DNA of 64,000 bases from Leucoraja ocellata (Eukaryota): assembly GCA_036785375.1 (NCBI GenBank), contig JAWMAR010000070.1:4278001-4342000 (forward strand), read 5' to 3'. Shown in pieces: positions 11,043 to 61,585 of this stretch. Each line of letters begins with the position of its first letter. The first letter of the stretch is position 1. The notes beneath the pieces were generated by a model that saw nothing but the letters and a program-made list of their open reading frames with translations, had not been told where the DNA came from and searched no databases. The position numbers and the translations under genes are program-made.

Positions 11043-11100
11043 CTAGGAGTCTTCATTATAATTCGTGGGTCGAGTGGCGAGGTTCTGTGTCATCGCGTCT
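11043..11100 (-). CDS. Gene C terminal exon DAMTQNLATRPTNYNEDS*
   Basis: TCTTTTGCAG acceptor; both differences from 21971-22028 are synonymous in this frame; AATAAA downstream near 10835-10840. Confidence 0.6.
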
Positions 11101-11271
11101 CTGCAAAAGACAATGTGAAGTCATCAGACAGACTGACAGTGGGAACCGCGCTTTATTTGTCCCGGCAACTCCCAACACATTGCTGTCTGCAAGATGCTAA
11201 CCCACGAATTAGTTAATCCAATGCCAACGAACCCACACCGGGCACAGAAATCCACCCTGCACGCGTACAAC

Positions 11272-11294
11272 CTGACAGAACCTCGTGATATCAT
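11272..11294 (-). CDS. Gene C probable micro-exon MISRGSV(R)
   Basis: 23 nt phase 0->2, bridging the TM exon to the frame of the last exon that shows only synonymous change; donor AG|GTTGTA is weak. Confidence 0.45.
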
Positions 11295-11746: not shown

Positions 11747-11837
11747 CTTAGAGCCTCTTGTGAGCACCGCGGTTGAGATACTCCAGATCACAAGCAGGAG
11801 AAAGAACATCCAGCGCCCCACTTCCCATGAGATGTAA
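11747..11837 (-). CDS. Gene C transmembrane exon with charged Arg, YISWEVGRWMFFLLLVIWSISTAVLTRGSK
   Basis: TTTGCCCAG acceptor, AAG|GTAGG donor, 91 nt phase 2->0; hydrophobic segment with Arg near its outer end. Confidence 0.78.
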
Positions 11838-14711: not shown

Positions 14712-14894
14712 GACATTAAACCTATGTCGTGGCGTTGTGAGACTGTGTTTCTATAGGCTTTGCCACTGTGCATTCAGATCAATACTCTCACGCATTTAAT
14801 GCCAGTGAAAGGAAGGCACAACTTCCCCCAATTACAGCATTCCCAATCAAAACACCAGCAATTAGTACATTTCATTGGAAACAGAGCATTTTAC

Positions 14895-14943
14895 CTTGCA
14901 GAGTAATTGGATGGTATCGAATTTTCACAAGAATATTCATGAC
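14895..14943 (-). CDS. Gene C stalk exon (G)HEYSCENSIPSNYSA(R)
   Basis: 49 nt, same splice sites and phases as 44602-44650. Confidence 0.7.
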
Positions 14944-15025
14944 CTGTTGGAACAAGGAAATAAAAGTCAGTTTCACTGCTTTTCTCTTGCAGTTGAGCAA
15001 GGAGGTATGATTTTCCGATGCAAGG

Positions 15026-15311
15026 ATAGCAGTAAAATAATTAGTCCAAGTCAGCATGGATTTATGAAAGGAAAATCATGCCTGACTATCTTCTGGAATT
15101 TTTCGAGGATGTGGCAAGTAAAATGGACGAAGGTGAGCCAGTGAATGTGGTGTATCTAGACTTCAAGAAATCCTTTGATAAGGTTCCGCACGGGAGACTG
15201 GTGACTAAATTGAGAGCGCATGGAAGGGTGTTGACGTGGATAGGAAATTGGTTGACAGACAGGAAGCAAAGAATAGGAGTGAACGGGTCCTTTTAAGAAT
15301 GGCGGGAAGTG
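15026..15311 (+). mobile_element. Shorter copy of the same CR1 fragment after gene C V
   Basis: Matches 58462-58745. Confidence 0.8.
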
Positions 15312-15353
15312 GCGAGTCAGTGGAGACGACAAGTCAATCGCTGCGAAACGTAC

Positions 15354-15672
15354 CGCCAGATACAAGGAGTTCTACGGTAAACATTGGGAGGCCGTTAGAT
15401 GGTTGTAATTCCACATCTGTACCACCCTGTATCGCAAGAGAGAAGATCCTCCCACAGTCACAGTAAAATATTCCTCGTGCCCGGTTATCTTTGACACTCT
15501 TCCTCTCCTTCCGCGTAGCCCAATTGTTTCCACCATATCTGTACATTGGCGATTCTGCACACGGCACAGTATTTTGTATGTGAGCGGTACTCTGCTGCAT
15601 AGTGACAATCGATTGTAATCGCACTTCCCACAAATCCTCTTACATACATCTCTCCCCACACTGCACCTGAAA
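15354..15672 (-). pseudogene. Gene C V-type Ig exon, frameshifted (pseudogene or consensus errors)
   Basis: Near copy of 58789-59109 but 319 nt, with five indels (-1, -4, +1, +1, +1); splice sites intact. Confidence 0.75.
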
Positions 15673-18084: not shown

Positions 18085-18121
18085 CCGGCAGCGAGGAGAT
18101 GAGAAGAATGGGAATCCACAT
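18085..18121 (-). CDS. Gene C exon 1, signal peptide MWIPILLISSLP
   Basis: 37 nt leader exon with G|GTGAGT donor. Confidence 0.8.
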
Positions 18122-21970: not shown

Positions 21971-22028
21971 CTAGGAGTCTTCATTGTAATTGGTGGGTCG
22001 AGTGGCGAGGTTCTGTGTCATCGCGTCT
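21971..22028 (-). CDS. Gene D terminal exon, short tail without ITIM
   Basis: Paralog of 11043-11100. Confidence 0.6.
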
Positions 22029-22668: not shown

Positions 22669-22759
22669 CTTAGAGCCTCTTGTGAACACCGCGGTTGAGA
22701 TACTCCAGATCACAAGCAGGAGAAAAAACATCCAGCGCCCCACTTCCCATGAGATATAA
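22669..22759 (-). CDS. Gene D transmembrane exon with Arg, YISWEVGRWMFFLLLVIWSISTAVFTRGSK
   Basis: Paralog of 11747-11837; visible in ORF 22306..22767. Confidence 0.78.
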
Positions 22760-22893: not shown

Positions 22894-24185
22894 CTTTGTA
22901 AAAGAACGGGTGTTGGATAGGGGGGAAGCGGGCGGGGGACAACCTATGATCACCGATTGTTGACGTCATTGCTGGGGCATGGCTACAAGACTGGGAATGA
23001 GAGACTACGCGGTTAAATGGATTCAGAGAAGACAGATAAATAAGTCATGAGTTGGGGCAGTGAATACAAAACCGATGGACACAAAATGTTGCAGTAACAG
23101 CGGGAGTGGCAGCATCTCTCTGGAGAGAAGGAATGTGTGAAGTTCCGTGTCGAGACCCTTCTTCAGACCAAGAGTCACGGGAGAGGGAAACTGTGGATGT
23201 GGAAGGATGCAAAGAACAGTGTGATACCCTGGAAGAAAGAAAATGCAGCTGCAAGGAAGTTTATAATAAAATCCATTTGGATAGGAATAATAAAAACGGA
23301 TCAATTCCAATAATGGAAGGGAGATGGGCAATAAAAATGGAAACAGATGAGGCCAATTAATAAAATTAATTAAAAAGTGATTATGCTTAATGTCACACCC
23401 TGGATACTTCGTGGATCAACGCGGTAGGTGTGTGGATGGAGGAATTGTGTTCGAAAAATCGGTTAAAGATTCGCTCATAACAGCGTGGCTTTCATGAACA
23501 TTTGCTAACGCAAGTATAACACAAGAGTGTGATAGAAAGTCAGATATATTTCAATTGTGATAAGATAAACAACAAAGTGTTCTCACTTTCATGACTATAT
23601 TATGATTGAATATTTAATGGTTTCAAGTATCAACGAGTAAGAGAGAGTCAGTTAACTCATTTTGCTGTATTCGGTCTGATTCAAGACAATTTTCTCACAT
23701 TCTGCGCCAGCGATTTTATGGTGTATGGCCCCATCAATGGCAAGGTGTTGCCACAAGTGATATCAAGGGGAGTGTGGCGTAGCCCATCATTCATAAGGCA
23801 TTTCCCTATCAGCACCACACAAGTGCAAGTCACAGCAAAGCTAAACTGGAAGACTAGGGTTTGGGAACTATATTAAACTCACAGCATGGGATGAGGTGAG
23901 TGATGTGGCAATCATGTTGAATACTGCAGGGAGCGCTCTCTGAAGAGCATCAAATGGAAGAACTTGTTCTTATCATCCAAGCATGNNNNNNNNNNNNNNN
24001 NNNNNNNNNNNNNNNNNNNNNNNNNNNNNNNNNNNNNNNNNNNNNNNNNNNNNNNNNNNNNNNNNNNNNNNNNNNNNNNNNNNNNNNNNNNNNNNNNNNN
24101 NNNNNNNNNNNNNNNNNNNNNNNNNNNNNNNNNNNNNNNNNNNNNNNNNNNNNNNNNNNNNNNNNNNNNNNNNNNNNNNNNNNNN

Positions 24186-30027: not shown

Positions 30028-30064
30028 CCGGCAGCGAGGCGATGAGAAGAATGGGAATCCACAT
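30028..30064 (-). CDS. Gene D exon 1, signal peptide MWIPILLIASLP
   Basis: 37 nt leader exon with G|GTGAGT donor. Confidence 0.8.
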
Positions 30065-32341: not shown

Positions 32342-32377
<36 letters not shown>

Positions 32378-45600: not shown

Positions 45601-48600
45601 TATTTTCAAGCTGTGTAAACATAAGAGGCAGTTCTAACAGGGAAGCTGGCCTACACCAGCAATGGGAAATCTGTGGCTGGAGCCCAGCAACCAAGTATTG
45701 ACAAATGGACCATAATATTATCATTTTAATCTTGATGTTAATTAAAGAACGTGCATGGATTTCAGGGTGTCGGGGTTATGGGGAGAAGGCAAGAGAATGG
45801 GGTGAAGAGGGGAAGAGACATCAGCCATGATTGAATGGTCTATTACTGCTTCTATCACTTGTGATCCTATGAACCACCCCACCGCACTTCCCCTTCTTCT
45901 CCTCATTCCCTCCACTACTTACCAGTGCCGTTGATTTTCACCAGGAAACTACAGGGCACGTCACTGCTGGAGATGGACACGTTGACCATTTCACTGGATT
46001 TTGATCCTTTATTATTTGAGGCTGTGCAATAATATTGATGGTGCTGGTGTTTGAAGGATTGACAATGTAGATCCAGGGCATTGTTGTCTGAGATCTTTGA
46101 ATCCCCTGATGGGATCTTTTCATACCAGCCGTAGTTAATGGGAAGGGATCCCCGGACCGACTCACAAGAAACTGTCGCTGAGCCCCCGAGACAAGAGACA
46201 TCGGCTGGTGACAGAAACCCAAGCACAGGAACAGACACGGGTTCTGTGGGAAAGGAGCAAACAGTCAGACAATGGGTGAACATCTGAAAATCAAACACTC
46301 GCCAATATCCACCATCTCTGTATCTTCGCTAGAGCCGCCAGGTTGGAATCTCACCCATCCATCTGCACAGAGTCATAGAGGCATATAGTGTAGAAGCAGG
46401 CCCTTCGATCTAATTTGCCCCCGCTGACCAACATGCCCATCCACACTAGTTCCACCTGCCCTTGCTTAGCCCATAAGCCTCCAGACGCAAGAGACTGTTT
46501 ATTTACTCGATCTATTCGTCGCGTGATTTTGTAGCTGCCGTAAGATCATCCCTCATCTTCCTGCTCACCCAGAAATAAAGTCCTAGTCTGCTCAATCCCT
46601 CCCTGGAGTTCAGGCACTCAAGTCATGGCAGCATCATTGTAAATCTTCTCTGCACCCAATCTTACTTGATAGCATCTTTCCTATAACATGGTGATGAATA
46701 CTGACCACAGAGCAGACATATCATCACACAATCTTCGATTCTCTTTTACATTTCAGGAATTGCCAGCAGGAAAAAGGGAGCATTGTTTATTTAACTGTCG
46801 GACCCATCCCATCTACATAGATTCGTAGAGTCATACAGTAGAAACCTCGGCCTAACTTGCCCGCGGGAACCAACACGCCAAATGTACACTAGTTCCACCT
46901 GTCCTTTCTTGGCCCTTAACCCTCTAAACATATCCTATTCATGTAACTGTCCAATATTTTCTGAAATGTTACGTTAGTACCAGCCATAACTACTTCCGTC
47001 GGCATTTCGTTTCATGGACCTACCAACCTTTGTGTAAACACGTTACTCGCCAGGTTCCTGTTAAATCATTCCCTCCTGATATGAAAACTATGTCCTCTGG
47101 TTCCCGATTGCCCTACTCTGGGCAAAAGACTGTGTATTTACTCGATCTATTCCTCGCGTGATTTTTGTGATTTAAAAAAAAATTAATAAATATTTTCATT
47201 AGAATCAATGCACAGTAGTATAAACGGTGTTTTACATATTACATTTAGTGTAAAACTTCTTGTTTTAAATGTATTAATAGAAAAGTAACAGAAGCAAAAA
47301 AGAGAAGGAGAAAGTTAAGTAAAGTAGTGATATTGATAGTTCGTGAAAGAATAGATAGAAAGAACCCGTAAAGATATAAAGCCGTAAAAAAAACGTGACC
47401 CCCCCACCGAAAACTAAATACATTAATTAGTAAATAGAAATAAAAAATAGAGAATAAAATAAAATAATAAGAAAACAAAACAGAAAAAGAATAAAAGGGA
47501 GAAGGGATATGCCTGCTTCATGTCTTTCCACACCCCTCACCCAGTTCTGAAACAGTTAATTTCCAGGGTTATGTTGCACCATATACCTGGAATAAGTCGA
47601 TAAAAGAGACCAAATCTTTAGCAATTGGTCTGCTTTACATGCTAGGACGAATCTCATATCTTGGAGGTGTAACATTTCAGACATGCTTGAAATCCACATT
47701 TTAAGCGTGGGGGTGGGTTCGTTGTTCCAGAATTTGAGTATACGTTTTTTTAGAAACATAGAAACATAGAAACATAGAAATTAGGTGCAGGAGTAGGCCA
47801 TTCGGCCCTTCGAGCCTGCACCGCCATTCAATATGATCATGGCTGATCATCCAACTCAGTATCCCGTACCTGCCTTCTCTCCATACCCCCTGATCCCCTT
47901 AGCCACAAGGGCCACATCTAACTCCCTCTTAAATATAGCCAATGAACTGGCCTCAACTACCCTCTGTGGCAGAGAGTTCCAGAGATTCACCACTCTCTGT
48001 GTGAAAAAAGTTCTCCTCATCTCGGTTTTAAAGGATTTCCCCCTTATCCTTAAGCTGTGACCCCTTGTCCTAGACTTCCCCAACATCGGGAACAATCTTC
48101 CTGCATCTAGCCTGTCCAACCCCTTAAGAATTTTTTAAGTTTCTATAAGATCCCCTCTCAATCTCCTAAATTCTAGAGAGTATAAACCAAGTCTATCCAG
48201 TCTTTCTTCATAAGACAGTCCTGACATCCCAGGAATCAGTCTGGTGAACCTTCTCTGCACTCCCTCTATGGCAATAATATCCTTCCTCAGATTTGGAGAC
48301 CAAAACTGCACGCAATACTCCAGGTGTGGTCTCACCAAGACCCTGTACAACTGCAGTAGAACCTCTCTGCTCCTATACTCAAATCCTCTTGCTATGAAAG
48401 CCAACATACCATTCGCTTTCTTTACTGCCTGCTGCACCTGCATGCCTACCTTCAATGACTGGTGTACCATGACACCCAGGCCTCGCTGCATCTCCCCCTT
48501 TGCCAATCGGCCACCGTTTAGATAATAATCTGCTTTCCCGTTTTTGCCACCAAAATGGATAACCTCACATTTATCCACATTAAACTGCATCTGCCAAACA

Positions 48601-51600
48601 TTTGCCCACTCACCCAGCCTATCCAAGTCACCTTGCAGTCTCCTAGCATCCTCCTCACACCTAACACTGCCCCCCAGCTTAGTGTAATCCGCAAACTTGG
48701 AGATATTGCCTTCAATTCCCTCATCCAGATCATTAATATATATTGTAAATAGCTGGGGTCTCAGTACTGAGCCTTGCGGTACCCCACTAGTCACTGCCTG
48801 CCATTGTGAAAAGGACCCGTTTACTCCTACTCTTTGCTTCCTGTTTGCCAGCCAGTTCTCTATCCACATCAATACTGAACCCCCAATGCCATGTGCTTTA
48901 AGTTTGTATACTAATCTCTTATGTGGGACCTTGTCGAAAGCCTTCTGGAAGTCCAGATACACCACATCCACTGGTTCTCCCCTATCCACGCTACTAGTTA
49001 CATCCTCGAAAAATTCTATAAGATTTGTCAGACATGATTTACCTTTCGTAAATCCATGCTGACTTTGTCCAATGATTTCACCACTTTCCAAATGTGCTGC
49101 TATCCCATCTTTAATAACTGACTCTAGCAGTTTCCCCACTACCGATGTTAGGCTAACTGGTCTGTAATTCCCTGTTTTCTCTCTCCCTCCCTTCTTAAAA
49201 AGTGGGGTTACGTTTGCTACCCGCCAATCCTCTGGAAATACTCCAGAATCTAAAGAGTTTTGAAAGATTATTACTAATGCATCCACTATTTCTGGAGCTA
49301 CTTCCTTAAGTACTCTGGGATGCAGCCTATCTGGCCCTGGGGATTTATCGGCCTTTAATCCATTCAATTTACCTAACACCACTTCCCGGCTAACCTGGAT
49401 TTCACTCAATTCCTCCACCTCCTTTGACCCGCGGGCCCCTGCTATATCGGGCCCCTGCTATATGTTATCAAGCCATGGTTAAGGAGAGAATTTTGGAACG
49501 AAATCAGCTTAGAGCCGGCTTCCATTGTTCCAAAAATAATCAATTCAGTGTTGGGGTACAATTTTATTTTAAACTCGCAGGATTTTTTTACCTGCAATAA
49601 AATCACCCCTCATCCTCCTGCGCTCCAAGGTATAAAGGCCTAATCTGCTCAACCCCTCCCTGTATACCAGGCCCTCAAGTCATCGCAACATCCTTGTAAA
49701 TCATCTCTGCTCCTTCTCCTCACAATCCATTTACCAGATTTAGACATATCTGTGTCTCTCCATCCTCCCAGTTGCCAGAACTACCATGTCTGGCACTGGA
49801 CCAGTACACAGCAGCACCATCTCTCTTTGTTTTACAATTCCAGCATCTGCAGTTAATCTTCTTTTAATCTGAAACTCTGCTTTTAATCTGAACATTCAAA
49901 TGCCTCATTAGTACAACAGTATCAACAACTTTTTAATTTCCTTGCATAAAATTGTTGATGGCGATACTGTTGCAATATTAAGGTGTGTGAATGGCGGTAT
50001 TGTAGAATAGTGTGTAGGGAGCGAATGGGAAAGTGGAATAACATAGAACTGGTGTGACCGGTGATCGCTAGGTGGTGTGGACTCGGTGGGCCGAAGGATC
50101 CGTTTCCATGTTACATTTGTAAACTATTACTAAATATCCGGGCGAACATTTTTATGTAAACTCTACAAACCGTTCACATATTTTGTTTTATAAAGCGGGG
50201 ACCAGACCTGTGCACCAGACTCCCACCTAACAAATGTTTTGCCCGTTGCCAAAGTGGAGACATCAAGTCACTCATTGAGAAACCTACCTTCAGATACTTG
50301 GAGATATACTTTAAATGTTGGTTCGCCAGGTGTAGTAATTCCACAGCTGTACCATCCTGTATCTCCAGAGTGAAGATCCTCCACAGTCACAGTAAATATT
50401 CCTCGTGCCGGGTTATCTGTGATTGACACTCTTCCGTTCTGTCCATGTTTCCCATTTGTTTCACCTACATGTGTACACTGGCGACTTGTCCCAGGGCACC
50501 AGTATTTTGTGTGTGAGCGGTACACTGCTGCATAGTGACAATCGATTGTGATCGCTCTTCCCACAACCCCTCTTACTTCGCTCTCCGCCCACAGTGCACC
50601 TGCAACTGAAGGAAACATCTTTGATAAATTGAAGAGCAAAATTAGCCTTTCACAAACATATACGTTAGAGTATAATGTACAGGGGAGTCTGCCCACTCTA
50701 TTTCTTAACTCTGTTGAATTCCACCTAGATTGCGATGAGATACAGATACTGTACATCGTCCCTCACCATCTGCACAGGTCGTTCCAAAGCGCTTCCCAGC
50801 CAATGTGGGTATGAATGGTGAAGAATGATGTATTGAAGATGGAGCCTGTTGCAATTGGAAGGCGCTGTCTAGGGAGTCTTGGTCAGTTGCTGCAGTGCAT
50901 CGTGCAGATGGTGCAAACTGCTGCTGCTCGGTATCAGCGGGCGAGGTTGAGGATGGGGTGTCTATCATGCGCGACTCTGGATCATGACAAACCAAACACA
51001 AGTGTTCGGCGTAATTGTAGCCTAGGCCAGTGCTTCTTAAACTGATGAATGGTTCATCCAAGGGCGAATAAAATTATTTTGGGGTAAATTAGTTAATTTA
51101 TGTTTTTTGCTCATGTGACAAAATCAATTATCTATAAAATTATGCACAAAGGAAAATACGATGATAATAGCCAAAAGAACATAAGAACATTTAGTGGAGG
51201 GTGAATTAAATTTTGTAATAAAGACTCAAGGGTGAATGACACTGTAATAGTTTAAGAAGAACTGGCCTTGTATAAAATTGGTCTCGCTGATGTAAACCAT
51301 TCACACCCTCTTCTGGTCTCCACACCTACAGGGAAGTTCTTTTCAATATTATCTTTGACAAAAGTAAGGGTTATACTTGATGGCGTGACGGCCAAGTAGA
51401 TTCCAATTTAATTTTGTGAGATTACTGGAGTTTAACACAAATTAACAGAGTTAAAATCATTAACATGATCATGAAATTGTACATCCTCGTTTATAACTGA
51501 TGATGGATCCAAACAGAATGGATTTGGTTTATTTCTCTGTCTCAAAGTGCGGCAGCCAGAAAATAATTTTGATGGAATGCACTCAACCCTCAGGTATTTC

Positions 51601-54600
51601 TCTCATTTGCTGACATTTCTCACCACCTCCCAGGTGAAAGCAACAGGCAATCATTTACCAGTCCCCCAAACAAACTCTCGCATTTTACACCATGAGCTCC
51701 CGGTGGCTGCAATGATGCCGTCTGCAAATAACGAGAAATCCATGAACACAAGGTGAATGAATAGCAGCAGGTTCAGGGACACGAGAAGAACACTCACCTG
51801 CATTGTTCATTTCTGTCACATAACTGCACGTTCCTGCTCCTTTGAAGACTTTCACGTTGAGTATTTCACTGGATTTTGTCCCACGATTATTTGTGGCTCT
51901 GCAGTAATATTGACGGTGTTGGCCTTCGAGGATTTCACAACTCAGATCCAGTTGATTGCCAGACACGGTCGTTGAAACCCAATGCTCGTTCTTCTTAAAC
52001 CATGTGTAATGGATGGGAAGGGATCCACGGACAGACTCACACGACACTGACACTGAGCCTCCGCGACGTGAGGCATTTGCTGGTGACAGATATCTGAGCA
52101 CAGGAGCAGACACGGGTTCTGTGGGAATGGAGCAAACATTCAGTCACCTGTATGAACAGTTAAAAACCAAACACATGCTAAATCTCAGCAGCCCTTTATC
52201 TCAGCCCGAACCGTCCGGTTGATATCTCACCGGCTCATCTACATCTCTGTGAGTGTGCGAAGCCCAGAAACCGAAGAAGGTTAGAGTTATAGAGAACCGA
52301 AAGATGCCCATCACAACAGCTCATTCATGCCGACCAACATGTCTTTCTGGGCCATTTCCATATGTCCACGTTTCTCCCTTATCACTCGCAATGATCCCAA
52401 TCTACGCAAATATCAAAAAAATATTTTTAAATGCTGCTTTTCTAACTGCCTTAACACCTTCCCCTGGCAGCAGGTTCCATATACATATCACCCAATGTGT
52501 GGAAAATGTTGTCCCTCAGAACATATGTTGGGATGTTACGTCCTTTTAAGATAGACACAAAATGCAGGAGTAACTCGGCGGATTAGGCAGCATCTTTCGA
52601 GAGAAGTCGTAGGTGACGTTTCGAATCGTGACCCTTCTTCAGCCTGAGAATCACGAGAAAGGGAGACAGAAGAGAAATGGAAGGGTAAGGTGTGAAAACA
52701 AGTGATCAAAGGTGAAAATGTTTTTAAAAAATGTAGAATGGATCATTGTCAGCTGAAGGGAAGGCATACATAGAAACATAGAAACATAGAAATTAGGTGC
52801 AGGAGTAGGCCATTCGGCCTTCGAGCTTGCACCGCCATTCAATATGATCATGGCTGATCATCCAACTCAGTATCCCGTACCTGCCTTCTCTCCATACCCC
52901 CTGATCCCCTTAGCCACAAGGGCCACATCTAACTCCCTCTTAAATATAGCCAATGAACTGGCCTCAACTACCCTCTGTGGCAGAGAGTTCCAGAGATTCA
53001 CCACTCTCTGCGTGAAAAAAGTTCTTCTCATCTCGGTTTTAAAGGATTTCCCTTTTATCCTTAAGCCGTGACCCCTTGTCCTGGACTTCCCTAACATCGG
53101 GAACAATCTTCCTGCATCTAGCCTGTCCAACCTCTTAAGAATTTTGTAAGTTTCTATAAGATCCCCTCTCAATCTTCTAAATTCTAGAGAGTATAAACCA
53201 AGTCTATCCAGTCTTTCTTCATAAGACAGTCCTGACATCCCAGGAATCAGTCTGGTGAACCGTCTGTGCACTCCCTCTATGGCAATAATGTCCTTCCTCA
53301 GATTTGGAGACCAAAACTGTACGCAATACTCCAGGTGTGGTCTCACCAAGACCCTGTACAACTGCAGTAGAACCTCTCTGCTCCTATACTCAAATCCTTT
53401 TGCAATGAAAGCTAACATACCATTCGCTTTCTTTACTGCCTGCTGCACCTGCATGCCTACCTTCAATGACTGGTGTACCATGACACCCAGGTCTCGCTGC
53501 ATCTCCCCCTTTCCCAATCGGCCACCATTTAGATAATAGTCTGCTTTCCTGTTTTTGCCACCAAAATGGATAACCTCACATTTATCCACATTATACTGCA
53601 TCTGCCAAACATTTGCCCACTCACCCAGCCTATCCAAGTCACCCTGCAGTCTCCTAGCATCCTCCTCACAGCTAACACTGCCCCCCAGCTTAGTGTCATC
53701 CGCAAACTTGGAGATATTGCCTTCAATTCCCTCATCCAGATCATTAATATATATTGTAAATAGCTGGGGTCCCAGTACTGAGCCTTGCGGTACCCCACTA
53801 GTCACTGCCTGCCATTGTGAAAAGGACCCGTTTACTCCTACTCTTTGCTTCCTGTTTGCCAGCCAGTTCTCTATCCACATCAATACTGAACCCCCAATGC
53901 CTTTTGCTTTAAGTTTGTATACTAATTTCTTATGTGGGACCTTGTCGAAAGCCTTCTGGAAGTCCAGATACACCACATCCACTGGTTCTCCCCTATCCAC
54001 GCTACTAGTTACATCCTCGAAAAATTCTATAAGATTCGTCAGACATGATTTACCTTTCGTAAATCCATGCTGACTTTGTCCAATGATTTCACCACTTTCC
54101 AAATGTGCTGCTATCCCATCTTTAATAACTGACTCTAGCAGTTTCCCCACTACCGATGTTAGACTAACTGGTCTGTAATTCCCCATTTTCTCTCTCCCTC
54201 CCTTCTTAAAAAGTGGGGTTACGTTTGCTACCCGCCAATCTTCAGGAACTACTCCAGAATCTAAAGAGTTTTGAAAGATTATTACTAATGCATCCACTAT
54301 TTCTGGAGCTACTTCCTTAAGTACTCTGGGATGCAACCTATCTGGCCCTGGGGATTTATCGGCCTTTAATCCATTCAATTTACCCAACACCACTTCCCGG
54401 CTAACCTGGATTTCACTCAATTCCTCCAACTCCTTTGACCCGCGGTCCCCTGCTATTTCCGGCAAATTATTTATGTCTTCCTTAGTGAAGACGGAACCAA
54501 AGTAGTTATTCAATTGGTCCGCCATATCCTTGTTCCCCATGATCAACTCCCCTGTTTCTGACTGCAAGGGACCTACATTTGTTTTAACTAATCTCTTTCC

Positions 54601-57600
54601 TTTCACATATCTATAAAAACTTTTGCAGTCAGTTTTTATGTTTCCTGCCAGTTTTCTTTCATAATCTATTTTTCCTTTCCTAATTAAGCCCTTTGTCCTC
54701 CTCTGCTGGTCTTTGAATTTCTCCCAGTCCTCCGGTATGCTGCTTTTTCTGGCTAATTTGTACGCATCATCCTTCGCTTTGATACTATCCCTGATTTCCC
54801 TTGTTATCCATGGATGTACTACCTTCCCTGATTTATTCTTTTGCCAAACTGGGATGAACAATTTTTGTAGTTCATCCATGCAGTCTTTAAATGTCTTCCA
54901 TTGCATATCTACCGTCAACCCTTTTAGAATTAATTGCCAGTCAATCTTGGCCAATTCACGTCTCATACCCTCAAAGTTACCTTTCTTTAAGTTCAGAACC
55001 ATTGTTTCTGAATTAACAATGTCACTCTCCATCCTAATGAAGAACTCAACCATATTATGGTCACTCTTGCCCAAGGGGGCACGTACAACAAGATTGCTAA
55101 CTAACCCTTCCTCATTACTCAATACCCAGTCTAAAATAGCCTGCTCTCTCGTTGGTTCCTCTACATGTTGATTTAGATAACTATCCCGCATACATTCCAA
55201 GAAATCCTCTTCCTCAGCACCCCTGCCAATTTGATTCGCCCAATCTATATGTAGATTGAAGTCACCCATTATAACCGTTTTGCCTTTGTCGCACGCATTT
55301 CTAATTTCCTGTTTGATACCATCTCCAACTTCACTACTACTGTTAGGTGGCCTGTACACAACACCCACCAGCGTTTTCTGCCCGTTAGTGTTTCGCAGCT
55401 CTACCCATACCGATTCCACATCCTCCAAACTAATGTCCTTCCTTTCCATTGCATTAATCCCCTCTCTAATCAGTATCGCCACCCCACCTCCTTTTCCTTT
55501 CTGTCTATCCCTCCTGAATATTGAATATCCCTGGATGTTCAGCTCCCAGCCTTGGTCACCCTGGAGCCATGTCTCCGTGATCCCAACTATATCATAGTCA
55601 TTAATAGCTATCTGCACATTCAACTCATCCACCTTATTACGAATGCTCCTTGCATTGAGACACAAAGCCTTCAGGCTTGTTTTTACAACACTCTTACCCC
55701 TTACACAATTATGTTGAAAAGTGGCCCTTTTTGATTTTTGCCCTGGTTTTGTCTGCCTGCCACTTTTACTTTTCACCTTGCTACCTATTTCTTCTACCCT
55801 CATTTTACACTCTTCGGTCTCTACGCTCACACATTTAAGAAACCCTTTCCCTTTAACTCCATCCTCCACTGTCCCATTCAACACCCCACCCCCCTTATTC
55901 AGTTTAAAGCCACCCGTGTAGCAGTGGCAAACCTGCCTGCCAGAATGCTGGTCCCACAACTGTTAAGATGCAATCCGTCCCTTTTGTACAGTTCCCCCTT
56001 ACCCCAAAACAGATCCCAGTGATCTAAGAATCTAAATCCCTGCCCCGTGCACCAGATCCTCAGCCACACGTCCAGGTCCCGTATCTCCCTGTTCCTGCTC
56101 TCGCCAGCACGGGGAACTGGAAGCAAACCGGAGATAACAACCCTGGAGGTCCTGCTTTTCAACATTTTTCCGAGCTCTCTAAAGTCACGTTGCAGAATAT
56201 TCATCCCCTTCTTTCCGACATCGTTTGTGCCGACATGCACTACCACTTCCGGATGTTCACCTTCGCCCTTGAGGATTTTCTGCACTCTGTCCGTGACATC
56301 CTGGATCCTGGCACCGGGAAGGCAGCACACCATCCTCGCATCCCGTCTGTTGCCGCAGAAACCCCTGTCCGTACCTCTCACGATGGAGTCTCCCACTACA
56401 ATGGCCTTGCCTGCCTTAGGCCTTTTTGGTTTTGGCTCAACAGCCCTATTCGCATCACAGGCCAGTCCGCCGCTCACGTCTTCTGTCCCAACAGCTTCTA
56501 AGCGGATGAACCTGTTTACAAGAGGTACATCACCCGGGGACGTTGGCATTCCATGCTTCCCTCCCTTTCTCACTGTCTCCCACCTTCTCTCTTCCAGTAC
56601 CTTAGGTGTAACAATCGTACTGTAGGACTTGTCGAGGAACGACTCCGTTTCTCGTACGAACCGGAGGTCATCCACTTGCTCCTCCAGTTCCCCAACACGG
56701 CCCTTCAGGAGCTCTACCTGGATGCATTTTTCGCATTTGTAGCAGCCAGAGGCACCAGCGGTGTCCTTGACCTCCCACATACTGCAAGCATCGCACTAAA
56801 TCAGCTTGCCTGACATCTCCTTCTTTCGTCTCCCTCTCAAGCGTATTGCGTGGTCTCCTCTCCGAAGACTCTCGAGCCAAAGACTCACACTTTTCTCACA
56901 GGGCACTTCACTCACTGCCGCTCGCAAAGAGCTGTCCTGCTTAAATTGACTGATAAATTGCCTGATTTACCAATTTACACAGCCAATTCCTCAGTTTTCA
57001 ACTGTTTTCACCCCTCTCCTCACACTTGGGCTAGAGCCAATCAGTGGTATCTCTTGCTAATCTGTTGCTGCTGTTGTTCCTCCCAAATCTACAGCAGTAC
57101 TGAACAAAGACGGTGCGTCCTTGGCCTTTTAACTGTTTTCAACTGTTTTCAACTGTTTTCACCCCTCTCCTCACACTTGGGCTAGAGCCAATCAGTGGTA
57201 TATCTTGCTAATCTGTTGCTGCTGTTGTTCCTCCCAAATCTACAGCAGTACTGAACAAAGACGGTGCGTCCTTGGCCTTTTAACTGTTTTCAACTGTTTT
57301 CACCCCTCTCCTCACACTTGGGCTAGAGCCAATCACACTTGGGCTGCGGAGCCTCGGGATATCGGTGCTGCCCTGACCCTTCCCGGAGAGAACATAGATA
57401 AGGCATTTCAGTGGAGACGTCAAGTCAAGCGCTGCGAAACGTACCGTCAGATACTTGGAGATGTACGTTAAATATTGGACGGTCGCCAGGTGTAGTAATT
57501 CCACAGCTGTACCATCCTGTATCTCCAGAGTGAAGATCCTCCACAGTCACAGCAAATATTCTTAGTACCGGTATATCTGTGATTGACACTCTTCCACTAC

Positions 57601-59941
57601 GTCCGTGTTGCCCATTTGCTTCCACTAAAACTGTACACGAGCGATTCCTCCCACGGCACCAGTATTTTGTGTGTGAGCTGTACTCTGCTGCATAGTGACA
57701 ATCGATTGTGATCGCTCTTCCCACAACTCCTCTTACAACCGTCTCTGCCCACACTGCATCTGAAACTGAGGGGAGAAACTTTCAGATGGACCAGTTGACC
57801 AGGGAGTGACGGAGGGAACGGTGTCTTCGGAAAGCGGTGGAAAAGGAAAGGTGTGGCTAGTTATCTGGTTATGGGATCCCGTTGGAGGTGGCGAAAATGT
57901 TGGATGATTATATGTTGTGTGCGACGGCTGATGGGGTGAAAGATTAGTTTATTCTGCTTACCACCGGGGAAATGTCCGGGTGGAGAGGCTGGCTGGCTGC
58001 CGGGCGGTGGGTGGACAGTGGCTGTTGGGGGTGGGGGCCCATTGACGGGGCAGAGGGAGAGAGAGAAAGAGCGCGGGATGGGGAGGGAATGACTGATCGC
58101 TGAGGTGGGAGCGGGAAGCGGTATGAACTGCACCGGGAGGACTGATGAGCTCTGGGGGCTGATATTTTTTTTAACTCTCCGGGTATTCAGACCGCGAGCA
58201 ACACTTGTTCCTCACTGTGGGATTATAAGTTTGAGTCTGAATGCAAACTTCTGACGGGTGACATTTCATACAGTTCAGAGGAAGGGAAATGCGCTGAGTA
58301 TTCCACTTGAAGTGAAAAGTGAAGTGAAAGTGAAGTTAAATCCCACTTTTCAAGAAAGGAGCAAGAGAGAAAACGGGAAATTACACACCAGTTAGCCTGA
58401 CTTCGGTGGCGAGAAAGATGCCGGAGTCAATTATTAAAGAGGTAATAATGGGGCATTTGGAGAGCAGTAAAATAATTAGTCCAAGTCAGCATGGATTTAT
58501 GAAAGGAAAATCATGCCTGACTATCTTCTGGAATTTTTCGAGGAGGTGGCAAGTAAAATGGACGAAGGTGAGCCAGTGAATGTAGTGTATCTAGACTTCA
58601 AGAAATCCTTTGATAAGGTTCCGCACGGGAGACTGGTGACTAAATTGAGAGCGCATGGAAGGGTGTTGACGTGGATAGGAAATTGGTTGGCAGACAGGAA
58701 GCAAAGAGTAGGAGTGAACGGGTCCTTTTCTGAATGGCGGGAAGTGGCGAGTCAGTGGAGACGACAAGTCAATCGCTGCGAAACGTACCGTCAGATACAA
58801 GGAGTTCTACGGTAAACATTGGGAGGCCGTTAGATGTTGTAATTCCACATCTGTACCATCCTGTATCGCCAGAGAGAAGATCCTCCACAGTCACAGTAAA
58901 TATTCCTCGTGCCCGGTTATCTGTGATTGACACTCTTCCACTCCTTCCGCGTAGCCAAATTGTTTCCACCATATCTGTACATTGGCGATTCTGCACACGG
59001 CACCAGTATTTTGTGTGTGAGCGGTACTCTGCTGCATAGTGACAATCGATTGTAATCGCACTTCCCACAACTCCTCTTACATACATCTCTCCCCACACTG
59101 CACCTGAAACTGAAGGGGAGAAACTTTCAGATGGAGAGCAAATGAACAGTTTAGTGGAAATAGATACATTTTGAAGATTACATGAAAGAAAACTTAAATA
59201 GTTCCATGATGTGTCATATTGCTTCACGGCCAATGTCTCCGGTCTGAAGTGCAGGCAGTGCTGTCATTGTACCAGTTCTGTCGGTGTTCTGTCCCCGGGT
59301 CAGTACAATTTGTGTTCACTTCCCACTCCAGATCCCTGAACAGAAACTGGGCTGGGATCGCAGTGCGGTACTGAGGGAGCGCGGCAGTGTTGCAGGAGCT
59401 CTGCAGCCCGGATCATCACCCGCACCAGATCATCGGCCCACATCACACCCATCCTCACTCAGCTCCACTGGCTCCCTGTGCACCACCGGATTAACTACAA
59501 GATTTTACTGCTGACCTTCAAAGCCCTACACCACCTTGCTCCCCAATACCTCTCTGACCTGCTGCTACCATACACTCCTTCCCGGTCACTTCGTTCCTCC
59601 TCAGCTGCAATTTTAACTGTCCCCACATTTAGACTCAGCAGAATGGTTGCCAGAGCCTTTGGCTGCTCTGCCCCACGTCTCTGGAACACTCTCCCACCTC
59701 CCTTCCGTCACCTGGACACTATCGATCAATTCAAATCACAACTCAAAACACACCTGTTTAGATTAGCATACCCGACATAACTTCCACCATGTTCACCCTG
59801 ATTTTAATGACTTAAAATATTTTGTGTGTTTTTTTGTTTTTTGTTTTTTGGCAACTTAATTTTAATATTGATAATTGTATTGTGATTTTATGTCCTGTAA
59901 GGTGTCCTTGGGTGTCCAGAGAGGCGCCAGCAAATAAAATG

Positions 59942-60022
<81 letters not shown>

Positions 60023-61585
60023 ATGAAAGAAAACTTAAATCGTTCCATGATGTGTCATATTGCTTCACGGCCAATGTCTCCGGTCTGAAGTGCAGGCAGT
60101 GCTGTTATTGTACCAGTTGTGTCAGTGTTCTGTCCCCGGTTCAGTACAATTTGGGTTCACTTCCCACTCCAGATCCCTGAGCAGAAACTGGGCTGGGATC
60201 GCAGTGCGGTACTGAGGGAGCGCGGCAGTGTTGCAGGAGCTGCCTTTCAACAATCCGAGGCGGTGCCCGGCCTCTCACCCCACAGAAAGACCCCACTTTG
60301 CTATTTCATTGGCGGTGCCGCCGGCTGCGCTGCCAACATTCATCTCTCAACCGACACTGGGCAGGACCCGTGTTTTTTTAAATTATCAAATCATTTATTC
60401 AATTATTAAAAATAGTATTTACACTACAATAAAACAAGAACCCAGCACCATAATACAAGACAAACAAATATACTAAATAAACTACTATACAACTATGTTA
60501 CAATGCTTGTCAAGGATGTACTCAACCACAGGCGGTGCCCAGATATCCCGGAAATCCCCCAGGTGCCCGTGGACAGCGCCTGGTCCTTCTCGAGTCCCAC
60601 ACGGACGCGGAAAGCCGACCCGTGTTTAGACATTCACCGCCGACAATGCTTTCCAACGCCCTGACTGAGAACAGAGGACGGACGAGTTACGGGTCCATTA
60701 ACGGAGAGCGGGTCCATTAACGGAGAGCGTTTGTAGCGTCACAACGCACACCGCCAGATTCGGGGAATGTTTCTTCCCAGCTGTTATCAGACATCGGAAT
60801 CATCCTCCCATAACCAGAGAGCAGTGCTGAACTATCTACCTCTTTGGTGACCCTCGGACTACCCTTGATCGGACTTTGCTGGCCTTACCTTACACTAAAC
60901 TTTATTTCCCATTCATGTATGTAAGATGATCGATTGTAATCATGTATCTGGCAGGTTAGCACGCAACATAAAGCTTTTCTCTGTACCTCGGTACACGTGA
61001 CAATAAACTGAACTTGGATTTCAGCACGACTGGGCCGCGGATCCGATAGCGGATGGAGAGAGAGTTGGCGGTGGGTGGATAGAGCGAGGACAGTGGTTCA
61101 GTCTCAGACTCCGGGGAATTGTTGGGTTTGCGACAGAGTTGAGATGGACAAATGCAGGGAATATTTGAACTGACACAACGAGTCCACAATCCTGACTTCC
61201 ACCTCAGTTGTAAACACATTTTGTTAGTGTAGAATTAACTTCCTGCTGATGTTGGAACCTCTGTCCTTCGGTCCAGGTGTCTTGGAGTATCTGCTCCAAA
61301 TACATTCGCTATTTAATGCCTATATATGCCTATCATCAGGATGCAATTAGACCTAGTGTTAGCGGTGGTTAAACTACGAACATAGTCTAGATATTCAAAT
61401 GTGATTTCAGATCCGTCACCACAATGCACTGAGTTCCATCTCCCCCATTACATGTCTACACACACTTAACCATCTCTGCTGTAGAAAGGGTGCACGGGAC
61501 CCCAACCTACATTGATCATTGGAATATCAAGATCTGGCTTTCACTCACCCGGCAGCGAGGCGATGAGAAGAAGGGGAATCCACAT
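39370..61585 (-). CDS. Gene B (whole span): inhibitory MDIR-like / CD300-pIgR-like receptor, L-V-V-C2-V-C2-stalk-TM-cytoplasmic tail with 3 ITIMs, 696 aa
   Basis: Exons 61549-61585, 58789-59109, 57445-57765, 51798-52118, 50288-50605, 45923-46243, 44602-44650, 42080-42168, 40059-40105, 39370-39636. All introns GT-AG, phases compatible, total 2091 nt = 696 aa + stop. Confidence 0.85.
40059..40105 (-). CDS. Gene B cytoplasmic exon ESKYNTSHGEDNDETQ
   Basis: TTTTCCAG acceptor, CAG|GTAAC donor, 47 nt phase 1->0. Confidence 0.72.
40822..41470 (-). mobile_element. CR1 internal fragment
   Basis: ORF 40820..41281 matches CR1 ORF2 (KRLVKTNVGPLQSE...NYRPVSL). Confidence 0.88.
42080..42168 (-). CDS. Gene B transmembrane exon IIYIVASGVTVLFLILIIAFFWYQKRKTK
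   Basis: Uncharged hydrophobic run followed by basic stop-transfer residues; phase 2->1 fits flanking exons; G|GTGAGT donor. Confidence 0.85.
43775..44372 (+). mobile_element. Degenerate Penelope-like 3' fragment
   Basis: RFTEHIRS...LEEQ...FRLG followed by the typical pLTR tail. Confidence 0.65.
44602..44650 (-). CDS. Gene B stalk exon (G)LEYSCETSKGSNALS(R)
   Basis: Polypyrimidine-CAG acceptor, AG|GTAAAC donor, 49 nt phase 1->2; conserved paralog at 14895-14943. Confidence 0.75.
45923..46243 (-). CDS. Gene B C2-type Ig domain (FCRL-like), type b
   Basis: EPVSVPVL...VSCESVRGSLPINYGWY...QYYCTASN...SEMVNVSI; 321 nt, donor G|GTAAGT. Confidence 0.88.
47165..49592 (-). mobile_element. L1/Tx1-type 3' fragment split by the CR1 insertion (47165-47750 and 49463-49592)
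   Basis: KRILKFWNNEPTPTLKMW...LHLQDMRF...KIW resembles an L1 ORF2 C-terminus; reading continues on the far side (PNTELIIFG). Confidence 0.6.
47751..49447 (-). mobile_element. 5'-truncated CR1 copy of the same family (RT portion)
   Basis: 427 aa ORF nearly identical to the ORF2 C-terminal half; FADY instead of FADD; same 3' tail. Confidence 0.92.
50288..50605 (-). CDS. Gene B V-type Ig domain 3
   Basis: VAGALW...DCHY...KYWCPGTSRQC...GDTGWYSC; 318 nt, phase 1-1. Confidence 0.9.
51798..52118 (-). CDS. Gene B C2-type Ig domain (FCRL-like), type a
   Basis: EPVSAPVL...VSCESVRGSLPIHYTWF...QYYCRATN...SEILNVKV; 321 nt, phase 1-1. Confidence 0.88.
52867..55959 (-). CDS. CR1 ORF2: APE endonuclease + reverse transcriptase (1030 aa ORF; true start uncertain)
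   Basis: LNARS, GITETWL, GVVYRPP, MGDFN, SDH; NYRPVSL, QHGF, YLDFQKAFDKV, GVPQGSVLGP, FADD; uninterrupted. Confidence 0.93.
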   Translation of the reverse strand: MWDQHSGRQVCHCYTGGFKLNKGGGVLNGTVEDGVKGKGFLKCVSVETEECKMRVEEIGSKVKSKSGRQTKPGQKSKRATFQHNCVRGKSVVKTSLKALCLNARSIRNKVDELNVQIAINDYDIVGITETWLQGDQGWELNIQGYSIFRRDRQKGKGGGVAILIREGINAMERKDISLEDVESVWVELRNTNGQKTLVGVVYRPPNSSSEVGDGIKQEIRNACDKGKTVIMGDFNLHIDWANQIGRGAEEEDFLECMRDSYLNQHVEEPTREQAILDWVLSNEEGLVSNLVVRAPLGKSDHNMVEFFIRMESDIVNSETMVLNLKKGNFEGMRRELAKIDWQLILKGLTVDMQWKTFKDCMDELQKLFIPVWQKNKSGKVVHPWITREIRDSIKAKDDAYKLARKSSIPEDWEKFKDQQRRTKGLIRKGKIDYERKLAGNIKTDCKSFYRYVKGKRLVKTNVGPLQSETGELIMGNKDMADQLNNYFGSVFTKEDINNLPEIAGDRGSKELEELSEIQVSREVVLGKLNGLKADKSPGPDRLHPRVLKEVAPEIVDALVIIFQNSLDSGVVPEDWRVANVTPLFKKGGREKMGNYRPVSLTSVVGKLLESVIKDGIAAHLESGEIIGQSQHGFTKGKSCLTNLIEFFEDVTSSVDRGEPVDVVYLDFQKAFDKVPHKKLVYKLKAKGIGGSVLMWIENWLANRKQRVGVNGSFSQWQAVTSGVPQGSVLGPQLFTIYINDLDEGIEGNISKFADDTKLGGSVSCEEDARRLQGDLDRLGEWANVWQMQYNVDKCEVIHFGGKNRKADYYLNGGRLGKGEMQRDLGVMVHQSLKVGMQVQQAVKKANGMLAFIAKGFEYRSREVLLQLYRVLVRPHLEYCVQFWSPNLRKDIIAIEGVHRRFTRLIPGMSGLSYEERLDRLGLYSLEFRRLRGDLIETYKILKRLDRLDAGRLFPMLGKSRTRGHGLRIKGKSFKTEMRRTFFTQRVVNLWNSLPQRVVEASSLAIFKRELDVALVAKGIRGYGEKAGTGY
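55899..56816 (-). CDS. CR1 ORF1, zinc-finger + SGNH/GDSL esterase-like; TAG at codon 7
   Basis: GDSIVR, CLPGA, VHVGTND, DGLHLN motifs; reads MSGKLI*CDACSMWEV...CEKC. Confidence 0.85.
56995..57343. repeat. ~150-bp tandem repeat (two copies plus a partial) in the CR1 5' UTR
   Basis: Repeated cacccctctcctcacacttgggctagagccaatca... units. Confidence 0.85.
57445..57765 (-). CDS. Gene B V-type Ig domain 2
   Basis: Same V motifs (DCHY, KYWC..C, GDTGWYSC); 321 nt, open frame, phase 1-1. Confidence 0.85.
58340..58745 (+). mobile_element. CR1 RT fragment in the intron after gene B V1
   Basis: SQHGF...VVYLDFKKSFDKVPH. Confidence 0.8.
58789..59109 (-). CDS. Gene B V-type Ig domain 1 (CD300/pIgR-like)
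   Basis: ITIDCHY...KYWC-x6-C...RVSITD...FTVTVEDL..GDTGWYRC; 321 nt, phase 1-1, AG/GT borders. Confidence 0.9.
59410..59942 (+). mobile_element. Same L2 fragment in gene B intron 1
   Basis: ORF 59478..59780; ends in AATAAA followed by (TAT)n. Confidence 0.85.
59943..60021. repeat. (TAT)n microsatellite, tail of the L2 element
   Basis: About 26 perfect units; the paralogous positions are N-gaps (16471-16599, 28203-28549). Confidence 0.95.
61549..61585 (-). CDS. Gene B exon 1, signal peptide MWIPLLLIASLP
   Basis: ATG, hydrophobic 12 codons, phase-1 donor G|GTGAGT; four paralogous copies in the window. Confidence 0.85.

What the first reader, a model, noticed from the sequence alone, without database searches (positions are those of the whole stretch)
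11043..61585. Paired inhibitory/activating receptor system sharing one N-terminal V domain
Seen: gene B has an uncharged TM and three ITIMs, while genes C and D have a TM with Arg (EVGRWMFF) and a ~26-aa tail lacking ITIMs. Gene C's leader, intron 1 (same L2 insertion), V exon and following CR1 fragment are near copies of gene B's, so the same binding domain is wired to opposite signalling modules. Known: an Arg near the outer end of the TM marks FcR-gamma-coupled activating receptors (FcalphaRI, OSCAR, LILRA), and skate MDIRs include charged-TM and ITIM forms. Inference: a KIR/LILR/CD300-style paired locus in a cartilaginous fish, with the activating exons mostly invisible in the ORF track.
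Basis: partly seen in the sequence, partly recalled or inferred. Interest (0 to 1): 0.85.

Follow-up and report, generated by a model that had tools for sequence, protein, structure and literature searches.

The report
Skate MDIR paired receptor gene cluster
This stretch of a skate-like genome carries genes of an already described immune-receptor family (MDIR): one intact inhibitory gene and two young copies of its activating counterpart that look damaged or incomplete as assembled, so the pairing is real but not new.

Summary
All genes lie on the minus strand.

- **Gene B (61585-39370):** ten open, phase-compatible exons. They encode V-V-C2-V-C2, a stalk, an uncharged TM and a tail with three ITIMs. 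This is the architecture of clearnose-skate MDIR3 (P0178).
- **Arg-TM exons (11747-11837 and 22669-22759):** with their tail exons they match the 3' module of the activating MDIR5 (P0196), 87-90% in the TM. The G-R-W..F.LL motif occurs in 25 of 205 fetched elasmobranch proteins.
- **Copy 3 (18121-11056):** its promoter, leader, intron 1 and V exon are 95-97% identical to gene B's. That block is joined at 15024-15026 to an MDIR5-type stalk. Its V exon carries five indels that break the frame.
- **Copy 2 (30064-21981):** no V or stalk exon is assembled. A 200-N gap and an inverted retroelement piece lie where they should be.

As assembled, the window therefore holds no intact activating gene.

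Verdict: these are new members of a known paired family (MDIR) and of modest interest. First-stage notes of this scan (unchecked) report similar Arg-TM modules elsewhere on this genome piece.

The parts
61549..61585 (-). Gene B leader exon (MWIPLLLIASLP, ends in phase 1)
   Evidence: one of 4 matches of the leader pattern in the window, 0 expected by chance
58789..59109 (-). Gene B V1 exon (321 nt, phase 1-1), CD300/pIgR-type V domain
   Evidence: V-set 1.8e-10; pIgR 6.8e-49, CLM-1 8.5e-18
57445..57765 (-). Gene B V2 exon (321 nt)
   Evidence: (V-set 1.1e-11)
51798..52118 (-). Gene B C2a exon (321 nt)
   Evidence: (Ig_2, Ig_C17orf99)
50288..50605 (-). Gene B V3 exon (318 nt)
   Evidence: (V-set 1e-12)
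45923..46243 (-). Gene B C2b exon (321 nt), FCRL5-like C2 domain
   Evidence: FCRL5 3.1e-46
44602..44650 (-). Gene B stalk exon (49 nt, LEYSCETSKGSNALS, ends in phase 2)
   Evidence: 93% to Amblyraja radiata P0181/P0182
42080..42168 (-). Gene B TM exon (89 nt), no charged residue in the helix, followed by KRKTK
40059..40105 (-). Gene B small cytoplasmic exon (47 nt, SKYNTSHGEDNDETQ)
   Evidence: bridges phase 1 of the TM exon to phase 0 of the last exon
39370..39636 (-). Gene B last exon with three ITIMs (ITYAVV, VVYADV, SIYASV) and the stop
   Evidence: 78% to MDIR3 (P0178), 96% to A. radiata P0182
32388..32609 (-). Truncated V3-type exon remnant at the upstream edge of the copy-2 unit
30028..30064 (-). 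Copy 2 leader exon
23986..24185 (.). 200-N gap where copy 2's V and stalk exons would be expected; flanks are not colinear with copy 3
22669..22759 (-). Copy 2 Arg-TM exon (91 nt)
   Evidence: 90% to MDIR5 P0196; tblastn E 1.7e-12
21981..22028 (-). Copy 2 tail exon (RRDDTEPRHSTHQLQ*)
18085..18121 (-). Copy 3 leader exon
15354..15672 (-). Copy 3 V exon. Splice sites are kept. It has 7 substitutions (2 silent, 5 replacement) and 5 indels against gene B's V1, and the frame is broken as assembled.
15024..15026 (-). Junction: homology to gene B's V1 block ends here, and homology to the intron upstream of a stalk exon begins
14895..14943 (-). Copy 3 stalk exon (49 nt, HEYSCENSIPSNYSA), MDIR5 type, ends in phase 2 as the TM exon needs
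   Evidence: 80% to MDIR5
11747..11837 (-). Copy 3 Arg-TM exon (91 nt)
   Evidence: 87% to MDIR5
11056..11100 (-). Copy 3 tail exon (RRDDTEPRHSTHEL*)
302..8315 (-). Copy 4: leader 8315-8279, V 6888-6571, C2a 4336-4016, V3 2711-2394, C2b 622-302, all open. Its 3' end lies beyond the window.

Best explanation
The window is a piece of a skate-type MDIR (modular domain immune-type receptor) cluster on the minus strand.

**Gene B.** It is an intact MDIR3-type inhibitory receptor: a leader, five Ig domains (V-V-C2-V-C2), a stalk, an uncharged TM and a tail with three ITIMs. By inference from how ITIM receptors work, ligand binding leads to phosphorylation of the ITIM tyrosines. These then recruit SH2 phosphatases, which damp signalling.

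**Copies 2 and 3.** Downstream lie two tandem units of about 11 kb. Each joins a copy of the shared promoter-leader-intron 1 module to the MDIR5-type activating 3' module: a TM exon with Arg near the outer end and a Tyr-free tail. Copy 3 also keeps the V1-type exon and an MDIR5-type stalk exon.

**How such a receptor would work.** By inference, the buried Arg pairs with an acidic residue in the TM of an ITAM-bearing adaptor. The adaptor is not identified.

**Origin of copy 3.** A deletion or recombination joined the intron after V1 to the intron before the stalk exon, at 15024-15026. The unit was then duplicated in tandem.

**Status.** As assembled, neither copy can make a receptor. Copy 3's V exon is frameshifted, and copy 2 lacks its V and stalk exons. 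My best reading is that these two are young, decaying members of a birth-and-death family whose working activating genes lie elsewhere in the cluster.

**Shown:** exon anatomy, phases, homology to the named MDIR3 and MDIR5 sequences, and the duplication structure.
**Inferred:** signalling, the adaptor, the order of events and pseudogene status.
For: - All ten gene B exons are open and their phases fit.
- P0178 is named Modular domain immune-type receptor 3 of Rostroraja eglanteria. It has the same V-V-C2-V-C2-stalk-TM-3 ITIM order, and its best-matching stretches are 72-90% identical to the Ig exons and 78% to the tail exon.
- P0196 (MDIR5) ends in a stalk, Arg-TM and tail that match copy 3's exons at 80%, 87% and 71%, and copy 2's TM and tail at 90% and 67%. 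Its continuous sequence confirms the stalk-to-TM and TM-to-tail junctions that I inferred from the splice phases.
- 25 of 205 fetched elasmobranch proteins carry G-R-W..F.LL. All 25 have Arg although the pattern allowed Lys. Four fetched proteins, three of them named as shark proteins, carry a V-I-R-W variant.
- Duplication structure.
- Copy 3's V exon has 5 indels and 7 substitutions (2 silent, 5 replacement). Its substitution rate equals that of the flanks: 7 in the exon against 19 in about 1,000 nt of flank.
- The five other full-length V exons in the window are intact. A neighbouring paralogous stretch is 99.4% identical over 521 columns. General base-level error therefore looks low.
- Copy 2 shows no V or stalk hit on either strand.
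Against:
- 5 of the 8 indels between copy 3 and gene B fall in the exon, which is a quarter of the aligned length (binomial p = 0.027). Four of them are one-base changes in short runs of one letter. That pattern also fits local consensus errors where many V-exon paralogs confuse an assembler. The indel-to-substitution contrast of exon against flank is not significant (Fisher p = 0.098).
- Copy 2's missing exons could lie in the 200-N gap.
- All splice sites, the leaders and the TM and tail frames of both copies are intact. That is what a working gene would show.
Confidence: 0.65

Rival explanations
1. Copy 3, and perhaps copy 2, are working single-V activating receptors whose V domain is nearly that of the inhibitory gene B. 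On this view the five indels are assembly errors, and copy 2's V and stalk exons sit in the gap.
For: - Leader, splice sites, stalk, TM and tail are intact in copy 3.
- The indels cluster in the most paralog-rich 319 nt (p = 0.027), and four of five are one-base run-length changes.
- By a rough motif count, about 7 of the 25 Arg-TM proteins have a single V domain (P0098, P0121, P0152, P0153, P0154, P0155, P0159).
- A V domain joined directly to an EYS-type stalk occurs in P0011.
Against: - The sequence as given reads into a stop after the first indel.
- Replacement changes outnumber silent ones 5 to 2, and the exon's substitution rate equals the flank rate, so no constraint is visible since the duplication.
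- The other five full-length V exons are clean.
- Copy 2's right gap flank is inverted relative to copy 3. A simple hidden exon does not explain that.
Confidence: 0.3
2. Copies 2 and 3 are not two loci. They are one locus written twice, a false tandem duplication of two divergent haplotypes in a gap-rich scaffold.
For: - The two units are colinear and sit side by side, with N gaps at the same homologous place in intron 1.
- One stretch is 99.4% identical.
Against: - Most of the units differ by 3-7.5% (92.5-97.3% identity).
- Copy 2 has about 2.5 kb between 25539 and 28084 that copy 3 lacks.
- Copy 2 also has the inverted retroelement piece and lacks 14271-15823.
- Copy 4's upstream edge abuts copy 3's 3' module exactly as copy 3's abuts copy 2's. 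This fits a real tandem array.
Confidence: 0.07
3. The Arg-TM and tail exons are orphan or alternative 3' exons. They would be reached by read-through splicing from gene B's stalk exon, so that one gene yields both inhibitory and activating forms.
For: - Gene B's stalk exon ends in phase 2, which the Arg-TM exon accepts.
- One RefSeq model (P0020) runs an Arg-TM segment on into a second receptor with ITIM-like motifs.
Against: - Each Arg-TM module has its own copy of the promoter-leader unit upstream.
- MDIR5 carries its own leader and ectodomain.
- Splicing would have to skip gene B's own TM exon, tail and terminal exon over about 22 kb.
- P0020 looks like an annotation fusion.
Confidence: 0.03

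Closest known systems
MDIR3 and MDIR5 of the clearnose skate Rostroraja (Raja) eglanteria (P0178, P0196). The family was described by Cannon et al. 2006, Immunogenetics 58:362, a paper I could not read; it is cited from the reference list of PMC3031540.
   Same: - Gene B has the MDIR3 domain order, stalk, uncharged TM, small cytoplasmic exon and the same three ITIMs.
- The stalk, Arg-TM and tail exons match the MDIR5 C-terminus at 67-90%.
[quoted passage not shown]
   Different: - This is another species. The best matches to gene B among the fetched proteins are Amblyraja radiata models, at 93-96% in stalk, small exon and tail.
- Copy 3 is a single-V form with the short MDIR5 stalk, whereas MDIR5 itself is V-C2-V-C2.
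- Copy 3's V exon is broken as assembled.
Mammalian CD300/CMRF35 family
   Same: - V domain of the same type. CLM-1/CD300f and CD300a structures match V1 at about 1e-16 to 1e-18, and the KYWC motif is present.
- The family likewise mixes ITIM members with charged-TM members (recalled; PMC3031540 passages).
   Different: - CD300 proteins have one V domain and no C2 domains. Gene B has five Ig domains, including FCRL5-like C2.
- The charged residue in activating CD300 members is mostly Lys or Glu, from recall.
- Orthology and synteny were not tested.
Polymeric Ig receptor (pIgR)
   Same: It is the best solved match to V1 (6.8e-49 summed over four V domains). RefSeq names many relatives 'polymeric immunoglobulin receptor-like'.
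   Different: pIgR has only V-type domains, no interleaved C2, and neither an ITIM tail nor an Arg-TM form. The name is an automatic label.
FcR-gamma-coupled activating receptors of the LRC (Fc-alpha-RI, CHIR-AB1, LILRA, OSCAR) and KIR/LILR-type paired loci
   Same: - A positively charged TM residue and a short tail without motifs. PMC4016189 (passages read) says such a residue in Fc-alpha-RI and CHIR-AB1 mediates binding to the gamma chain or DAP12.
- Pairing arose by shuffling of 3' modules.
   Different: - The Ig domains are unrelated C2 types.
- No adaptor was examined here.
[quoted passage not shown] The partner in elasmobranchs is therefore open.

Membership tests
MDIR (modular domain immune-type receptors) | CD300/pIgR-like V domains with the YWC motif and a second Cys pair | tested here: met
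   Pfam V-set for the 4 V exons scanned. PDB matches to pIgR, CLM-1 and CD300a. KYWC and the Cys residues are visible in the translations.
MDIR (modular domain immune-type receptors) | Modular mix of V and C2 exons, all phase 1-1 | tested here: met
   Exon lengths are 318 or 321 nt with phase-1 acceptors and donors. C2 exons match FCRL5.
MDIR (modular domain immune-type receptors) | Close sequence relationship to the named MDIR sequences | tested here: met
   P0178 (MDIR3) and P0196 (MDIR5) were found. Per-exon identities are 67-91% with E down to 7e-70. No phylogeny was built.
MDIR (modular domain immune-type receptors) | Members carry either ITIMs or a charged TM | tested here: met
   Three ITIMs in gene B. 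Arg-TM exons in copies 2 and 3.
MDIR (modular domain immune-type receptors) | Transcribed and spliced in immune tissues | not testable with these tools
No RNA holder is on record.
Paired receptors (near-identical ectodomain, opposite signalling) | An intact activating partner with an ectodomain like the inhibitory one | tested here: inconclusive
   The V block is 96.7% identical in DNA. The activating copy's V exon has 5 frame-breaking indels, and the other copy has no V exon assembled.
ITAM-adaptor-coupled activating receptors (FcR-gamma / DAP12 type) | Basic residue inside the TM helix and a short tail without signalling motifs | tested here: met
   Arg is the 8th codon-aligned residue of the TM exon, and the tail is Tyr-free. 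Arg is kept in 25 of 25 motif-bearing relatives.
ITAM-adaptor-coupled activating receptors (FcR-gamma / DAP12 type) | Physical and functional dependence on an adaptor with a TM Asp | not testable with these tools
CD300/CMRF35 family proper | Single V domain ectodomain | tested here: not met
   Gene B has V-V-C2-V-C2 and copy 4 has V-C2-V-C2. Only copy 3 is single-V.

The most novel reading that the evidence does not exclude
The window catches the very recent birth of a single-V activating receptor. On this reading, a deletion at 15024-15026 fused the inhibitory MDIR3-type gene's promoter, leader and first V exon (about 2% diverged) to the ancient elasmobranch Arg-TM module. The new unit was then duplicated in tandem. 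If the five indels are assembly errors, the skate has a working activating partner whose V domain differs from the inhibitory gene's by only five residues. That would be a clean, datable example of how paired receptors arise, in the oldest jawed-vertebrate lineage. Its adaptor is unknown, because the gamma chain is said to start with bony fish.
Probability: 0.3. Interest if true: 0.5.

Novelty: new member of a known kind. Interest (0 to 1): 0.3.

Why it matters
Paired inhibitory and activating receptors are a recurring design in vertebrate innate immunity. MDIRs show that the design already exists in cartilaginous fish.

This window adds genomic detail to a family that, as far as I could see, is known from named sequences:
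- the exon map of an MDIR3-type gene;
- the exon map of the MDIR5-type activating module;
- a precise recombination junction that made a single-V form;
- signs of rapid birth and death, namely tandem duplication, a truncated V exon, frameshifts and an inversion.

The Arg-TM module is conserved across skates, rays and sharks. That makes the identity of its signalling partner in elasmobranchs a concrete, testable question. None of this changes the existing picture of the family.

Tried and rejected
- **Direct splicing of the V (or leader) exon to the Arg-TM exon.** It is out of frame and gives VTSHGKWGAGC.. followed by a stop. Two RefSeq models, P0004 and P0005, end in exactly this way. I rejected it as the main form.
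- **A 90-nt or 19-nt exon ending at 11906 (copy 2: 22828) just upstream of the TM exon as the stalk.** The longer acceptors have the wrong phase, and my copy-3 end coordinate was off by one. MDIR5 and P0054 show that the EYSC-type stalk exon joins the TM exon directly, so I dropped it.
- **Homology between the 3' half of copies 2 and 3 and the 3' half of gene B.** I found only repeat fragments plus the stalk region at 81%.
- **Inverted V or stalk exons in copy 2.** There were no plus-strand hits.
- **Species identification from runs.** No run held half of the words, and the organisms are coded.
- **Literature.** Searches found only PMC3031540 mentioning MDIRs in the held library. Cannon et al. 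2006 (PMC3701310) and PMC2823954 are not held. What that paper and its supplements say about gene structure, TM residues or expression was therefore not seen and may bear on novelty.
- **Reading frame for gene B's TM exon.** It was one base off.
- **Exon bounds.** They were slightly wide (15340-15673 instead of 15354-15672). All counted changes lie inside the true exon.
- **Joined spliced model.** None was searched, folded or typed.

Full report
**What is in the window.** The window is vertebrate DNA at about 45% G+C, with four N runs. On the minus strand it carries many Ig-domain exons. A 24-letter leader pattern occurs four times, at 61585, 30064, 18121 and 8315, where chance predicts none. 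That defines four transcription units, which I call gene B, copy 2, copy 3 and copy 4. A self-comparison shows that the block holding promoter, leader and intron 1 is present four times at 92-96% identity. In addition, 1-10148 is a paralogous image of 45625-63780.

**Gene B.** I mapped ten exons using splice sites, phases and relatives found later as guides:
- leader 61585-61549;
- V1 59109-58789;
- V2 57765-57445;
- C2a 52118-51798;
- V3 50605-50288;
- C2b 46243-45923;
- stalk 44650-44602;
- TM 42168-42080;
- a 47-nt cytoplasmic exon 40105-40059;
- last exon 39636-39370.

All ten are open, and the phases chain as 1, 1, 1, 1, 1, 1, 2, 1, 0. The TM helix has no charged residue. The last exon holds ITYAVV, VVYADV and SIYASV. 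The V exons score as V-set and match pIgR and CD300/CLM-1 structures. The C2 exons match FCRL5.

**The Arg-TM modules.** The exons at 11837-11747 and 22759-22669 have clean acceptors and donors. They translate to YISWEVGRWMFFLLLVIWSISTAV(L/F)TRGSK. Each is followed, about 650 nt downstream, by a phase-0 exon encoding RRDDTEPRHSTHEL* or RRDDTEPRHSTHQLQ*. The tail after the helix is therefore 19-20 residues with no Tyr. The 2.9-kb blocks around these exons are 94.5% identical. They are not homologous to gene B's 3' half.

**What they are.**
- A search of 1.84 billion representatives with V1 gave 2,434 hits.
- Of the best 150, 8 carried a VGRW-type TM, and 17 had two or more ITIM-like motifs near the C-terminus.
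- Ten of them that I looked up by name are RefSeq models from skates and rays: Rhinoraja, Leucoraja, Amblyraja, Hemitrygon and Mobula.
- A further search returned two named sequences of the clearnose skate: MDIR3 (P0178, 701 aa) and MDIR5 (P0196, 501 aa).
- MDIR3 has exactly gene B's order, V-V-C2-V-C2, then stalk, uncharged TM, small exon and three ITIMs. Its best-matching stretches are 72-90% identical to the Ig exons and 78% to the tail exon.
- MDIR5 ends in a stalk, an Arg-TM and a tail. These match copy 3's stalk exon (14943-14895, 80%), the TM exons (87% and 90%) and the tail exons (71% and 67%).
- MDIR5 is one continuous protein sequence, so it confirms the two junctions that I had inferred from phases alone.
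- Across all 205 fetched proteins, 25 carry G-R-W..F.LL. All 25 have Arg although the pattern allowed Lys. Four proteins, three of them named as shark proteins, carry a V-I-R-W variant.
- The module is therefore old and conserved in elasmobranchs.
- PMC3031540 (passages read) already describes skate MDIRs as multigene families of activating and inhibitory receptors related to CD300, TREM, FCAR and pIgR.

**Copy 3.**
- Its leader (18121-18085), intron 1, V exon and the LINE fragment after it are near copies of gene B's, at 95.3% and 96.7%.
- That homology stops at 15024. From 15026, the sequence matches the intron upstream of gene B's stalk exon at only 81%.
- The stalk exon itself is of the MDIR5 type.
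- This is a recombination junction that removed the other four Ig exons. It agrees with an earlier first-stage note on this window.
- The V exon (15672-15354) keeps both splice sites.
- It differs from V1 by 7 substitutions, 2 silent and 5 replacement.
- It also has 5 indels of -1, -4, +1, +1 and +1, so the frame runs into a stop.
- The exon's substitution rate equals the flank rate. Indels are over-represented in the exon (5 of 8; p = 0.027), while the indel-to-substitution contrast is not significant (p = 0.098).
- I cannot tell real decay from local assembly error. The five other full-length V exons are clean, and a 99.4% identical paralogous stretch lies next door. Both lean towards real mutations.

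**Copy 2.**
- Leader, TM and tail exons are intact.
- Nothing between 20600 and 28200 matches a V or stalk exon on either strand.
- The equivalent of copy 3's 14271-15823 is missing.
- The retroelement piece 13538-14271 appears inverted at 24957-24222, next to the 200-N gap at 23986-24185. That piece has a weak GIY-YIG match.
- This gap is the one that matters, because continuity across it is not established.
- The other three gaps lie in intron 1 of copies 2 and 3, and their flanks are colinear with gene B.
- I filled no gap.

**Expression.** No listed run holds half of the words, and none is on record as an RNA holder.

**Mechanism.**
- For gene B, inhibitory signalling by ITIM phosphorylation and phosphatase recruitment is inferred from the motifs. 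All three motifs are also present in MDIR3.
- For the Arg-TM module, pairing with an acidic TM residue of an ITAM adaptor is inferred by analogy. PMC4016189 (passages read) describes this for Fc-alpha-RI and CHIR-AB1.
[quoted passage not shown] The partner in elasmobranchs is therefore an open point that I could not test.

**Verdict.**
- The system belongs to the known MDIR family.
- The new elements are the exon maps, the junction that made a single-V form, and evidence of fast turnover.
- First-stage notes of this scan (unchecked) report similar Arg-TM modules from 300 kb before to 500 kb beyond this window on the same genome piece. That fits a large cluster in which working activating genes may lie elsewhere.

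Noticed in passing
window 52867-56780 (minus) and 47756-49452: A full-length LINE sits in gene B's V2-C2a intron. It has a 1,030-aa ORF2 (endonuclease plus reverse transcriptase) and a 293-aa ORF1 with a GDSL esterase domain. A truncated copy that is 97.3% identical lies in the V3-C2b intron. The element looks young and possibly active.
   Followed up: partly
window 32388-32609 and 10133-10205: A V3-type exon is cut off at 32388, at the edge of the copy-2 unit. The translated ORFs at this edge and at the matching edge of copy 4 both show a run of prolines. The tandem duplication may have broken an older gene at a low-complexity tract.
   Followed up: partly
window 13563-14773 (minus) and 24222-24957: A retroelement fragment with a weak GIY-YIG match (E 7.7e-4, below the Pfam cut-off), perhaps Penelope-like. 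It lies in copy 3's stalk-TM intron and, inverted, in copy 2.
   Followed up: partly
P0004 (Leucoraja erinacea) and P0005 (Amblyraja radiata): Two RefSeq models splice a C2 exon straight to the Arg-TM exon. This reads it out of frame (VTSHGKWGAGC.. then stop). It is either an annotation error or a stalk-skipped, TM-less isoform.
   Followed up: no
P0054 and P0020: P0054 fuses a TRIM69-like N-terminus to an MDIR5-like C-terminus. P0020 runs an Arg-TM segment on into a second receptor with ITIM-like motifs. Both look like merged neighbouring genes in automatic annotation.
   Followed up: no
window 59103/59109, 57759/57765, 50599/50605, 6882/6888, 2705/2711: Every V exon has two in-frame acceptors six bases apart. 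Relatives appear to use the upstream one.
   Followed up: no
window 302-8315: Copy 4 has the V-C2-V-C2 ectodomain of MDIR5, with all exons open. Its TM and tail lie beyond the window, so its signalling type is unknown.
   Followed up: partly
window 25540-28083: About 2.5 kb in copy 2's intron 1 has no counterpart in copy 3 or gene B. I did not characterise it.
   Followed up: no
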